Assembly: GCA_002104945.1 (NCBI GenBank)
Contig: MCFH01000054.1
Span: forward strand, 186,001-250,000
Origin: Piromyces finnis finn
Lineage: Eukaryota; Fungi; Neocallimastigomycota
Length of the DNA: 64,000 nt
Reading direction: 5' to 3'
Shown here in pieces: positions 34,301-44,862 of the stretch. Below the pieces are notes generated by a model. The model did not search any database. It worked only from the letters and a program-made list of their open reading frames with translations, and was not told where the DNA came from. Every line of letters begins with the position of its first letter. The stretch's first letter is position 1. Both the position numbers and the translations under genes were made by a program.

Positions 34301-36155
34301 ACTATATAATTTTATATCAATTCTCCATTCAGGTAAATTTTTCTGACTTTCTTCATAATATTCTGAATTGACTGGAGGAACTGGACCTAATTAATATAAT
34401 TTGTTATAAAGAATTGTACTTAATATTATGCATTTACACTTTTATCAAATTTTCGAATTTCGATGCAATATTAATATAATATATATCAACCTGTAACATC
34501 AGAATACATTGAAAGAATTAATTCTTCTGATTGAAGTAGTATGGGAACACGTGCATATTCATTTTTATCATCTTTATTTTCACTTCCTTTATAATTATTT
34601 TGGTATGTATTAAATGGAATTAAGGCTTAATTATTTACATAATATATAAATCATAATATTTATATTATAAAAAGGATATCTTGCAAGTCCAGTCCATGTT
34701 GTTTTCTTTATATTACTTTCATTTTTAGTATTTTTTATTTTTTTATTTTTATTAAATAGATAATTAAATGTAAAAACATATTTTACCCTATCTTTTAATG
34801 ATTTTTTAGAACTTTTTATATTTTTTAATATTTAATATAATAATATAAGAATAAATGTTTTTCTTTAATAAATAATATATTAAAATATACATTAAAATAT
34901 ATTATAAGATTTATGATTATTACCTATTGACAAAGTTATTAATGTCATTTTTTCTATAATTTATATGATCTGAATTTGCTCTTATACTAACTACAGGTTT
35001 TATTAAATCAACATTCAATTTCGTCATATAATAATCAAAAATTGAACTTGCCTATAAATCATTAATAATTATAAAGTATTAATTATAAATTTAAATATAT
35101 AAATATAAAATTATTACAATGACTTACTGTATCAACAGAATAGGAAACTTTCATTCCATTAAAATCAGCAACTAAAATTGAAGGAAGATCTCTGCTTCCA
35201 ATATATACAGCACCTTTATTAACTTCTACATATATTGGTAATAAACTTTTAAATAATTTATCTTTATTGACTTTATTTGGAAGAATATATTCGCCAATAT
35301 TTGTCACATTCACTTTCAAAAAAATAAAACCATCAGTTTCATTCTATTACTTTTATTATATATATTATATATATATCCATATTTATTATAACGATTTTTA
35401 TTTTTTGTTATTAATTTTTACCTGCTACGCTTTCATTAGATTCTCTTCTTAATATTCTTTTTAAATCTTCATATACTGCCATATTGTTATATATGTAATA
35501 TTCCAAACCTTCTGCAAATACTCTCACTCTTGATGGTTTTTCTTCATCATCTATATTATTTTATATTAAATTTATAATTATTTATCACACCAAATAAATT
35601 GTTAATTATTAATACATTACCTCTAAAATTTGAAACAAGTTGCATTTGTTTTTCTTTTTTCGTTTTTGCTTTATTAATGAATGACCAAAGTACTGTAATA
35701 TACCCTCGTTCAATATAGATTGATTCATTTTTTGATATATAACTCAATTTTTTAAATAATATTGTTCCACTTAAAGGACATATTACAATATTTTCTTATA
35801 TAAAATAGATATTAAATGTATATTTAATATAATTAAGGAAGGTAATAAAGATAAAACTAATTTTTATAATAATATACCTATATTAATTAAGGTATTTAAT
35901 TTGGGCCAGGTGTATATATTAATCAACTTTATGAAAATAAAAGTAAAGAATCTACTACTATAGAGTAGTAATAAATATGCTAATAAAACTATTAGCAAAC
36001 ATCTATATATATTATATAGATCAAATGTTAATAAATAATAATAAAATTATAATATTATAACTTTTATGTTGTTACCTTATTGTTAAATTTATAAATTGAA
36101 CAAATTTATCTTTCGATTGTACTGGCTCTTCGAAATAAACTTCATAAAGAGCCAT
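23891..36155 (-). CDS. CSF1: Bridge-like lipid transfer protein Csf1/BLTP1 (KIAA1109/Tweek family); about 23 exons, terminal exon 23891-30247
   Basis: N-terminal TM helix followed by LYSSRFFTFIFIKLINIYTWPK; NESIYIERGYITVLW; GLEYYIYN; LLPIYVEVNKGAVYIG; EYARVP; PEWRIDI...YGPWTDRNR; RPYAWLDV; IYGHRMFGPMP; C-terminal LEPQLKVIGDATSWEWVDYIG. These match my recollection of fungal Csf1 blocks. One apparent single-base frameshift lies near 33910. Confidence 0.88.
31305..31420. repeat. (TTA)n microsatellite in a CSF1 intron
   Basis: About 20 uninterrupted TTA units followed by degenerate TGTTTATTA units. Confidence 0.9.
34607..34679 (-). other. U12-type (minor spliceosome) AT-AC intron in CSF1, 73 nt, phase 2
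   Basis: Minus strand: GCA AG|ATATCCTTTTT...AAGCCTTAATTCCATTTAATAC|A TAC CAA. Splicing gives TTWTGLAR-YQNNY. Read-through of the unspliced intron reaches TAA. Confidence 0.85.
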
Positions 36156-42211: not shown

Positions 42212-42531
42212 CTTTTTATTCAACATAACTATGATTATTATGTATAATAAATATCATTATAATAATTATTTTATAATTAATAAAAAAATTTCTATTTTTT
42301 TTAAAAAATACATTTAAATTAAATTAATAGAAGCAAAATGTATACAAATTTATATGTAATGTAATTTATAAATAAATAATAAAAAAGAATAATTATTTTA
42401 ATAAAATTAATAAAACCATAAAAAACCTAAAAATAATATATATTGTAAATATAAAATTGTTGTGATAATTATGAAAAATAGTGAATATATTATAGTAATA
42501 AGTAAAGTTCATTTTTAAAATTTAGGTAAAT

Positions 42532-43901
42532 ATGGGAAAGCATTCGCATGATATTCCATGGAAAAAATATAAAGAAATTCTCGAATTTGAAGGTTATTAT
42601 TTGAGTTTGTCTATTTCAATCATTCATTTTGTATAATATATATTATTTATATTATATATTAAGATCCTAATAAAATATAAAAGTTTAAACTAATTCTTTA
42701 TAATTATTGAAAATATTTTTCATATAACCCTATGTATAATTTCACATTAAACAGAGCCTCCTGAAAAACAGTATATAAAAGGTAAATATTTAATTTTTGA
42801 AATTAATTAAAAATGAATATTTAATAATTAAATATTCATTTTCTTTTCTTTTCTTTTTTTCTTTTTCTTTTTATACTTTTAATATCAAATAAAAAATAAT
42901 TCTAATTAATATATTTTTCAAATTAAAGACAAAACAAAATCTGAATTAGAATATTCTGTTCTTTTAGAAGATAATATCCTTTATAATATTATTGAAAATA
43001 ATATAAATTCGTTATAATAGTAAAACCATTTAATTATTATTCCTTAATTTCACAAAATTAACACAAGAAAATATTTAATATACCAATAGAAGATGAATTT
43101 ATAGTAGTTTCTTGTAATACTTGTAAAAAGCCAGTTTTACAAAGTGCTTTATTATACCATTTAGGTAAGCAAATTTATAAATAAAAAAATAAAAGTAATT
43201 TATATTAAATAAAAAAAAAATTTTTTAATAACATAATAAATAATTAGAAAATTGTAAAAAGATAAAAAAAATTCAAGAAGAATCTGGTCCTTTGAAAAAA
43301 GATATTCAATTAAGTGTATTCTATGCCTCTAAACCACTTCCAGTAGTAAAACCAAAGAAAAATAAGAAAAGAAAATTAACCGAGGGTAAGAAAGACAAAC
43401 TTTTTAAAAAAATTTTTTTTTTATGAAAATTAATAATTAACTAATTAATATAATAATAGATGGTCAAATTATTGAAAAAGAATCTAAAAATAAAGAAAAT
43501 GAAACTGTAAAAGAAAAGAAAAAAGCTAAAGATAATGATAATGCTAAAAAGTCAACAAAGAAAAAGAAAGGTAAGAAAAATTATTGATAATATAAGCATT
43601 AATTATAAATAAAAATTTTAAAAAATTGTAGAAAATAGATAGGGTATAATTTTTTTTTTTTTTTTTTTTGTAGTGAAATACTAATAGATTATTTAATTAA
43701 TATATATACTAAATAAATTATTTAGGTCCAATTGATCTAGATAAACAATGTGGTGTTATGACAGAAAATGGTACAGTATGTACTCGTTCTTTAACATGTA
43801 AGATCCACTCAGTATCAGCAAAACGTGCTGTCCAAGGAAGATCTCAAGATTATGATACACTATATAGAGCAACGAGTAGATTAAAAGGTAATAATAATAA
43901 T

Positions 43902-43934
<33 letters not shown>

Positions 43935-44318
43935 ATTTTATAAATACATTACAATGTGTTTATGTACTTTTACTAAAAGTAAAAAAAAAAAAAATTAACA
44001 CCTTATCATTTTTATCTTTTTTTTTTCTTTCTTTTTTTAGAAATGGCTGCTAATCAATTAGCAAATTCAATGGCAAAACAGAAAAAAGATGCAAAAGCGG
44101 CTGCTACACGTAAAGCACTTAAAGATGCTGCTGAAGCTGCTGCTAATGCAGCTACACTTGCAGCTGGTATACCTATACCAACAAATTCAGATGAAGAAGC
44201 CGAAGTTGTATATACAGCTGTTAAATATCATCAACCTACACCACTTTATATGAAAAATCCTTTCTCATTAAGAAGACGAATTGCCATGTTTCAATATCGT
44301 GAAGAATTTTGTTCCTAA
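42532..44318 (+). CDS. SGF73: SAGA deubiquitination module subunit Sgf73/Ataxin-7 family; 8 exons
   Basis: Zn[21 protein letters not shown]; SCA7 domain [44 protein letters not shown]; C-terminal [19 protein letters not shown]. Confidence 0.92.
42974..43062 (+). other. U12-type (minor spliceosome) AT-AC intron in SGF73, 89 nt, phase 1
   Basis: GAA GAT A|ATATCCTTT...TTCCTTAATTTCACAAAATTAAC|AC AAG AAA ATA TTT. Splicing gives [18 protein letters not shown]. Unspliced, the frame stops at TAA 43015. Confidence 0.88.
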
Positions 44319-44862
44319 TAATATATTATGTAATATATAAATTTTTGGTTCCTAAAAATTTTGTAAATAATAATGAAATTACTACTCTCTTTAATACCAA
44401 AGCGATGAAAAGAAAGCTGAAAAAAGATAAATAATAAATATAAATAATTAATCAATATCAATGACTGTAATAATTAAAATACATATATTATATATATTTC
44501 CTTTAATCGTTCAATTAATTTCATATTCATTTATATAATAATCCTTATTAATATATTAAATATACATGTTCATATTTTTAAGAAAAAAAAAAAAATCAAA
44601 TTTCTACTATCACTATGATTTATTATTTAAACTCATTATAAATAAAATATATCACAATAAATAATATTAAAACTAAATAAAAAATTAAAAAAAAAAAAAG
44701 AAAAGAAAAGTGATAAGTTTTCCTTTATTTTTAAAAAAGTTTTATTTTTTTTTTTATTTTTCTTTTTTTTTACTTTTGAAACCAATTTTTCTTTAATAAT
44801 ATTTTTTTGACTATAAATTTAAATACATTCCTTTATAAATAAAATTGTTAATGGGTTTAGAA

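What the first reader, a model, noticed from the sequence alone, without database searches (positions are those of the whole stretch)
42974..43062. U12-type AT-AC intron in SGF73/Ataxin-7
5' site ATATCCTTT at 42974, branch TTCCTTAAT at 43040-43048 (A 15-16 nt from the end), and AC at 43061-43062. Of the three nearby ACs only this one gives an open frame, producing [21 protein letters not shown], which fits the Sgf73 pattern L-x-E/D...[IM]F-x-x-P-x-x-D before the zinc finger. The only canonical alternative needs a weak GTTCTT donor (42958) with AG at 43067. The intron lies just upstream of the ZnF, so slow minor splicing could limit SAGA DUB-module assembly (inference).
Basis: partly seen in the sequence, partly recalled or inferred. 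Interest (0 to 1): 0.85.

Follow-up and report, generated by a model that had tools for sequence, protein, structure and literature searches.

The report
Known minor-spliceosome intron in SGF73
The 89-base stretch is a genuine AT-AC intron of the rare "minor spliceosome" type in the SGF73/ataxin-7 gene of the gut fungus Piromyces finnis, but it is already in the public gene model, belongs to a lineage already known to have such introns, and shows no sign of a special regulatory role.

Summary
ATATCCTTT at 42974, TTCCTTAAT at 43040-43048 and AC at 43061-62 are all there. They bound an 89-nt phase-1 intron in an 8-exon, 307-aa SGF73/ATXN7 gene (42532-44318, +).

The window is Piromyces finnis MCFH01000054.1. 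The public protein ORX43273.1 is identical to my AT-AC splice model, so the intron is already annotated.

I found other evidence instead:
- In two sister species, RNA contigs match genomic contigs at 100%. They remove exactly the orthologous intron, and AT-AC is the only known splice type that fits.
- Across three genomes the 5' site and the last 24 of 26 intron bases are invariant. The five neighbouring GT-AG introns keep only 6-11 of 26.
- The 7 codons that the rival GT-AG splice would delete are present in all six relatives' mRNAs, with almost only synonymous changes.
- An AT-AC U12-type intron sits at the same place (within one codon, same phase) in Rhizophagus and Jimgerdemannia. It is absent in two Mucorales.

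Minor introns in P. finnis were reported by Larue and Roy (2023). Nothing supports the "slow splicing limits DUB assembly" idea. This is a sound but ordinary finding.

The parts
42532..44318 (+). SGF73/ATXN7-family gene, 8 exons, 307 aa (public protein ORX43273.1 of Piromyces finnis)
   Evidence: The exon model translates to a protein identical to P0153. The gene range matches the annotated gene in MCFH01000054.1. It has a Pfam SCA7 domain and Sgf73 is the best PDB match.
42929..42973 (+). Exon 3 (45 nt), ending in phase 1 (...GAA GAT A)
   Evidence: Its last 16 nt (42958-42973) are kept in the mRNAs of all relatives, with synonymous changes plus one D-to-E change.
42974..43062 (+). Intron 3, 89 nt, AT-AC, U12-type
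42974..42982 (+). U12-type 5' splice site ATATCCTTT
   Evidence: It is invariant in the orthologous introns of L006 and L014 and present in Rhizophagus and Jimgerdemannia.
43040..43048 (+). Branch-point box TTCCTTAAT, with branch A at 43046/43047
   Evidence: It lies in a 23-nt block, TTCCTTAATTTCACAAAATTAAC, that is invariant in three genomes.
43061..43062 (+). 3' terminal AC
   Evidence: In L006 the next two bases are AT instead of AC, a synonymous AAC-to-AAT change. This places the 3' site at this AC and not the next one.
43063..43164 (+). Exon 4, which encodes the N-terminal Sgf73-type zinc finger (C-x2-C...H-x3-C)
   Evidence: C, C, H and C are invariant in alignment A2.
43726..43887 (+). 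Exon 7, which encodes the SCA7 zinc-binding domain
   Evidence: PF08313, E 4.4e-25 for the exon alone and 1.3e-27 in the whole protein.
42958..43067 (+). Rejected alternative GT-AG intron (GTTCTT...AAG), which would delete the codons VLLEDNK
   Evidence: It is in frame. However, the 7 codons are present in the public protein and in six relatives' mRNAs under codon-level constraint.

Best explanation
Window 42974-43062 is a constitutive U12-type (minor-spliceosome) AT-AC intron. It is the third of seven introns in the Piromyces finnis SGF73/ataxin-7 gene.

By the known mechanism of this intron class, the 5' site ATATCCTTT would be read by U11 and then U6atac, and the box TTCCTTAAT by U12 snRNA. 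There is no polypyrimidine tract. Cleavage occurs after the AC, 15 nt past the branch A. Removal joins GAT A to AC AAG and gives ...SVLLEDNKKIFNIP... in front of the zinc finger. Retention would stop translation after about 57 residues.

The intron is old. A U12-type AT-AC intron of the same phase lies within one codon of this position in Glomeromycotina and Endogonales, and it has been lost in Mucorales.

Shown here: the sequence features, identity with the public protein, removal in sister species, and motif conservation. Inferred: dependence on the minor spliceosome, and removal at exactly these bases in P. finnis itself.
For: - Motifs at the stated coordinates.
- Only this junction with a consensus 5' site keeps the frame open. 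The only canonical alternative is 42958-43067.
- The AT-AC model is identical to the public 307-aa protein ORX43273.1. The window maps to GCA_002104945.1 MCFH01000054.1.
- RNA contig L002 matches genomic contig L006 at 100% across 7 of its 8 exons (the remaining one 99.1%) and skips L006 1508-1590. L020 and L025 match L014 at 100% and skip 2731-2815. Within the 1-3 nt of junction ambiguity, AT-AC is the only known splice type. All other introns of both genes are GT-AG.
- The first 9 and the last 24 of 26 intron bases are invariant in three genomes, against 6-11 of 26 in the five U2-type neighbours. The intron interior is only 30% invariant.
- The codons VLLE[D/E]N-K are present in six relatives' mRNAs, with changes almost all at third positions.
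- Rhizophagus irregularis L031 850-941 and Jimgerdemannia L033 786-885 carry ATATCCTTT ... TCCTTAAY ... AC, in phase 1, directly before MKTYG.
- P. finnis is reported to have minor introns and minor snRNAs (PMC10639083).
Against:
- A word-index test was designed so that only the AT-AC mRNA would hold any words (window 42929-43097, 13 sampled words). It listed no RNA run. Under the AT-AC model I estimate about a 13% chance that none of the 20 informative words was sampled, so this result is mildly unfavourable or uninformative.
- The branch-to-3' distance of 15-16 nt is somewhat longer than the 11-13 nt optimum known for U12 introns. In Rhizophagus and Jimgerdemannia it is 12 and 11.
- No minor snRNA gene lies in this window, so the machinery is taken from the literature and from unchecked earlier notes.
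- The protein alignment puts the Piromyces and Rhizophagus introns one codon apart unless a one-residue gap is allowed.
Confidence: 0.93

Rival explanations
1. The real intron is the canonical GT-AG pair 42958-43067, spliced by the major spliceosome. This would give a 300-aa protein without VLLEDNK, and the U12-like motifs would be chance matches in AT-rich DNA.
For: The pair is in frame. The combined U12 motif arrangement is expected by chance about once per ten such windows. No RNA run was listed for the words that only the AT-AC mRNA would hold.
Against: The public protein contains VLLEDNK. All six relatives' mRNAs contain these codons with a synonymous substitution pattern. Two cDNA/genome pairs splice at AT-AC, not at the equivalent GT. 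GTTCTT is unlike the GTAAG/GTAAA/GTAAT donors of five of the gene's six other introns (intron 1 has GTTATT). The U12 motifs are invariant across species while the intron interior is not.
Confidence: 0.02
2. It is an AT-AC intron removed by the major (U2-type) spliceosome, like the rare U2-type AT-AC class.
For: AT-AC ends alone do not define the spliceosome. No experiment here shows U12 dependence.
Against: By established knowledge, U2-type AT-AC introns have GTAAGT-like 5' sites (ATAAGT...) and a polypyrimidine tract. This intron has a full ATATCCTTT 5' site and a TTCCTTAAT box 15 nt from the end, with an A-rich, non-pyrimidine spacer. All of these are conserved across species.
Confidence: 0.03
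3. One reading: the intron is a slow, rate-limiting step that gates production of zinc-finger-containing Sgf73 and so limits assembly of the SAGA deubiquitinase module.
For: Retention would truncate the protein before the zinc finger. Minor introns are on average spliced less efficiently in animals (general knowledge). The intron has been kept in several deep fungal lineages.
Against: No retention data were obtained here. RNA contigs of P. finnis hold about the share of words expected for fully spliced mRNA (0.42), and none held intron words. One partly processed contig in a relative has lost the AT-AC intron but keeps three GT-AG introns. Mucorales do without the intron. The published survey favours neutral explanations for minor-intron retention (PMC10639083).
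Confidence: 0.07

Closest known systems
U12-type (minor spliceosome) introns, AT-AC subtype, as catalogued across eukaryotes including Neocallimastigomycetes (Larue and Roy 2023, PMC10639083)
   Same: A consensus 5' site ATATCCTT, the branch box TTCCTTAAY close to the 3' end, no polypyrimidine tract, AT-AC ends, phase 1, and strong conservation of the two motifs and of position across distant lineages.
   Different: Nothing essential. The branch-to-3' spacing (15-16 nt) is at the long end of the usual range. The whole 14-nt spacer is also invariant among three close species.
The orthologous SGF73 intron of Rhizophagus irregularis (L031 850-941), which the public Sgf73p model P0162 uses
   Same: AT-AC ends, ATATCCTTT, TTCCTTAAC, 92 nt against 89 nt, phase 1, directly before the [M/K]K-x-[F/Y] motif that precedes the zinc finger.
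   Different: The split codon is D (G|AT) in Rhizophagus and N (A|AC) in Piromyces. The ungapped alignment puts them one codon apart. Branch-to-3' spacing is 12 nt against 15 nt.
Sgf73 / ataxin-7, the anchor of the SAGA deubiquitinase module (solved structures 6tb4, 6t9i, 7ktr)
   Same: An N-terminal C-x2-C...H-x3-C zinc finger, an SCA7 domain and a conserved C-terminal stretch. The match to 6tb4_C covers residues 61-306 with E 5.7e-25.
   Different: The protein is much shorter (307 aa against 657-892 aa). It has no polyglutamine tract. The Pfam matches to the N-terminal finger are below the curated cut-off.

Membership tests
U12-type intron (AT-AC subtype) | 5' splice site /[A/G]TATCCTT directly at the exon end | tested here: met
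   ATATCCTTT at 42974-42982. It is invariant in the orthologues.
U12-type intron (AT-AC subtype) | Branch-point box TTCCTTRAY about 10-20 nt from the 3' end, with no polypyrimidine tract | tested here: met
   TTCCTTAAT at 43040-43048, with branch A 15-16 nt from 43062. The spacer TTCACAAAATTAAC is A-rich.
U12-type intron (AT-AC subtype) | The intron is actually removed from RNA at the AT-AC boundaries | tested here: inconclusive
   Met for the orthologous intron in two sister species, using 100%-identical cDNA/genome pairs. For P. finnis itself there is only the public protein model.
U12-type intron (AT-AC subtype) | The genome encodes the minor snRNAs (U11, U12, U4atac, U6atac) | not tested
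   None lies in this window (Rfam). They are reported for P. finnis in PMC10639083 and in earlier notes of this scan, which I did not check.
U12-type intron (AT-AC subtype) | Splicing depends on the minor spliceosome (U12/U6atac) | not testable with these tools
   This needs snRNA depletion, or suppressor experiments with a mutated snRNA.
U12-type intron (AT-AC subtype) | Splice motifs conserved across orthologues while the intron interior drifts | tested here: met
   9 of 9 bases at the 5' site and 24 of 26 at the 3' end are invariant, against 30% in the interior and 6-11 of 26 in the U2-type neighbours.
Sgf73 / ataxin-7 | SCA7 zinc-binding domain | tested here: met
   PF08313, E 1.3e-27, 95.9 bits against a cut-off of 23.
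Sgf73 / ataxin-7 | N-terminal Sgf73-type zinc finger upstream of the SCA7 domain | tested here: met
   C, C, H and C are invariant in alignment A2. The alignment to Sgf73 chain 6tb4_C starts at this finger. The Pfam matches zf_C2H2_13 and Sgf11 are only sub-threshold.
Sgf73 / ataxin-7 | Subunit of SAGA that anchors the Ubp8/Sgf11/Sus1 module | not testable with these tools
   This needs biochemistry.

The most novel reading that the evidence does not exclude
This SGF73 intron is a relic U12-type intron that dates back at least to the common ancestor of Neocallimastigomycota and Mucoromycota, and possibly to the opisthokont ancestor if animal ATXN7 genes share it. It is kept because its removal is used to tune the supply of zinc-finger-bearing Sgf73. 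The unusual invariance of the whole 23-nt 3' block would then reflect a bound regulator.
Probability: 0.05. Interest if true: 0.5.

Novelty: already known. Interest (0 to 1): 0.15.

Why it matters
This mainly works as quality control.

There are two modest by-products. First, the SGF73 minor intron is shared (within one codon, same phase) by Piromyces, Rhizophagus and Jimgerdemannia and has been lost in Mucorales. That adds one data point on minor-intron retention and loss in early fungi. Second, several public SGF73 models in Glomeromycota and Endogonales are visibly wrong at exactly this junction, because gene predictors miss AT-AC introns.

It opens no new question about splicing or about SAGA.

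Tried and rejected
Local alignments used only 42400-42625 and 42664 onward, and intron 1 was left out of the conservation analysis.
2. I ran a discriminating word search on window 42929-43097, where only an AT-AC-spliced mRNA could hold any 31-mers. No RNA run was listed. Only 13 words were sampled, so this result is weak.
3. An exact look-up of the P. finnis protein found only the genome contig and no P. finnis RNA contig. A search with residues 1-120 found only relatives' fragments.
4. A metagenome scan with the exon-4 peptide alignment gave three loci, all of them spliced cDNA-like contigs.
5. An Rfam scan of the window found no snRNA.
6. A paper search for ATXN7 together with "minor intron" found nothing relevant.
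7. I considered reaching animal ATXN7 genes with the last protein search. I dropped this because the length window and the exact-word requirement make it unlikely to work.
8. I considered the AT-AC pair shifted by 2 nt (42976-43064, same protein). I rejected it because its 5' site is not consensus and because L006 has AT, not AC, at the second position.

Full report
**What is in the sequence.** The window has 19.6% G+C. It carries an eight-exon gene on the + strand from 42532 to 44318:
- E1 42532-42592
- E2 42755-42781
- E3 42929-42973
- E4 43063-43164
- E5 43248-43385
- E6 43460-43570
- E7 43726-43887
- E8 44041-44318

Six of the seven introns are GT-AG, five with GTAAG/GTAAA/GTAAT donors and intron 1 with GTTATT. 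The third intron, 42974-43062 (89 nt), begins with ATATCCTTT and carries TTCCTTAAT at 43040-43048. It has an A-rich spacer with no pyrimidine tract and ends in AC, 15-16 nt after the branch adenosines.

- The upstream AC (43052-53) introduces a TAA stop.
- The downstream AC (43063-64) fits only with a non-consensus donor.
- Among canonical GT/GC-AG pairs, only 42958-43067 keeps the frame. It would delete the seven codons VLLEDNK.
- Leaving the intron in gives stop codons.

**How improbable is it.** Each motif alone is at chance level in this AT-rich DNA: 7 found vs 8.8 expected, and 3 vs 3.9. The ordered combination is expected about 0.10 times per window under a first-order Markov model. The sequence alone would therefore not settle the matter. 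The exact fit to an in-frame exon break and the comparative data do.

**Identity of gene and genome.**
- Exon 7 encodes an SCA7 domain: E 4e-25 alone and 1e-27 in the full protein.
- The best solved relative is Sgf73 (6tb4_C, E 6e-25). The alignment runs from the N-terminal zinc finger to the C-terminus. Ataxin-7 comes further down the list.
- A search with the SCA7 exon, followed by a search with the best full-length relative, found a 307-aa protein named "SCA7-domain-containing protein [Piromyces finnis]", ORX43273.1. It is letter-for-letter identical to my AT-AC splice model and not to the GT-AG alternative.
- It maps to GCA_002104945.1 contig MCFH01000054.1 with the same gene span.

So the window is P. 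finnis, and the public annotation already contains this intron.

**Transcript evidence.**
- Four RNA runs of the organism hold 0.35-0.42 of the sampled words of 42500-44400. That equals what I calculate for a fully spliced mRNA (0.42-0.43), but it cannot separate the two models.
- A second query was designed so that only AT-AC-spliced RNA could hold any word (42929-43097). It listed no run. With 13 sampled words, I estimate about a 13% chance of that outcome under the AT-AC model. It is a weak negative, and it also shows that the RNA contigs hold no retained intron.

**Sister species supply the missing evidence.** The protein collection holds spliced RNA contigs and unspliced genomic contigs of close relatives of P. 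finnis (85-93% DNA identity).
- RNA contig L002 (Logan SRR8270241) matches genomic contig L006 at 100% across 7 of its 8 exons (the remaining one 99.1%), and skips L006 1508-1590.
- RNA contigs L020 and L025 match L014 at 100% and skip 2731-2815.
- The junctions are ambiguous by 3 nt and 1 nt respectively. Within that range AT-AC is the only known splice type and there is no GT-AG.
- All other introns of both genes are GT-AG.

**Conservation.**
- Across the window, L006 and L014, intron 3 keeps ATATCCTTT and 24 of its last 26 bases, including the full block TTCCTTAATTTCACAAAATTAAC. Its interior is only 30% invariant.
- The five neighbouring GT-AG introns keep 6-11 of their last 26 bases.
- In L006 the two bases after the AC are AT instead of AC. 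This is a synonymous AAC-to-AAT change, and it fixes the 3' site at 43062.
- The seven codons that the GT-AG alternative would remove are present in six relatives' mRNAs. Their changes are confined to third positions plus one D-to-E change.

Together this rules out the GT-AG pair as the main splice.

**Depth of conservation.**
- Rhizophagus irregularis has a 92-nt intron (L031 850-941): ATATCCTTTG ... TTTCCTTAAC, then 12 nt to AC, in phase 1 directly before MKTYG. The public model P0162 uses it.
- Jimgerdemannia flammicorona has a 100-nt intron (L033 786-885): ATATCCTTTC ... TCCTTAAT, then 11 nt to AC, also in phase 1.
- In Piromyces the split codon is N (A|AC). In the other two it is D or E. 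MAFFT places them one codon apart, and a one-residue gap would make them the same codon. Two independent rare AT-AC introns 3 nt apart are very unlikely, so I read them as one ancestral intron. I state this with that caveat.
- Two Mucorales, Phycomyces nitens and Halteromyces radiatus, have uninterrupted coding sequence here.

**Function.** The mechanism is that of the class: recognition of the 5' site and branch box by U11/U12, catalysis with U4atac/U6atac/U5, and cleavage after AC. This is inferred from the motifs, not tested.

- There are no retention data.
- The RNA contigs hold no intron words.
- The one partly spliced contig found in a relative (L026/L027) has lost the AT-AC intron and introns 1, 2 and 6 but keeps GT-AG introns 4, 5 and 7. 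Its 3' end looks chimeric, and I infer that it derives from RNA only from a sister sample of the same series.
- Mucorales manage without the intron.

[quoted passage not shown] They count 205 minor introns in R. irregularis, find none in Ascomycota or Basidiomycota, and provide a database for more than 1500 species. Earlier notes of this scan list many AT-AC candidates and minor snRNA genes in the same genome. I used them only as leads.

**Verdict.** This is a textbook member of a known intron class, in a lineage already known to have it, and it is already present in the public gene model. The call is correct but ordinary. Interest is 0.15.

Noticed in passing
window 34607-34679 (- strand): A second AT-AC candidate intron of 73 nt: ATATCCTTT ... 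GCCTTAAT, with AC 12 nt further on. Removing it opens one reading frame across the join, and leaving it in gives stops.
   Followed up: partly
L033 786-885 (Jimgerdemannia flammicorona RBNJ01014924.1): The public model P0156 starts at an ATG inside the orthologous U12 intron, so its first ~30 residues are translated intron. An open upstream frame (...SKLAYSE) joins correctly once the AT-AC intron is removed.
   Followed up: partly
proteins P0178, P0159, P0163, P0060, P0157, P0175 (Glomeromycota SGF73 models): These public models disagree with each other exactly at the D|MKTYG junction (for example YYDILSFKHMKTYG, QEVNTYG, or a start at MKTYG). This is what is expected when gene predictors cannot use an AT-AC intron.
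   Followed up: partly
L031 2360-2596 (- strand), Rhizophagus irregularis: An EnY2/Sus1-family gene (PF10163) lies directly next to SGF73. Both products belong to the SAGA deubiquitinase module.
   Followed up: no
window 43040-43062; L006 1568-1590; L014 2793-2815: The 14-nt spacer up to the 3' AC is invariant in three genomes, not just the branch box. This is far more conserved than the 3' ends of the neighbouring introns. It may reflect a constraint on spacing or 3'-site choice, or something bound there.
   Followed up: no
L026 and L027 (JGI 3300010976 / 3300010980): This contig of a third relative lacks introns 1, 2, 3 (the AT-AC one) and 6 but keeps introns 4, 5 and 7. After about position 1271 it runs into unrelated sequence. 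It is probably a partly spliced, chimeric transcript assembly.
   Followed up: partly
L034 (Phycomyces nitens) and L035 (Halteromyces radiatus): There is no intron at the SGF73 position in these two Mucorales, although the surrounding LN-x-RD-[MR]K-x-[FY]G motif is conserved. This points to intron loss in that order.
   Followed up: yes
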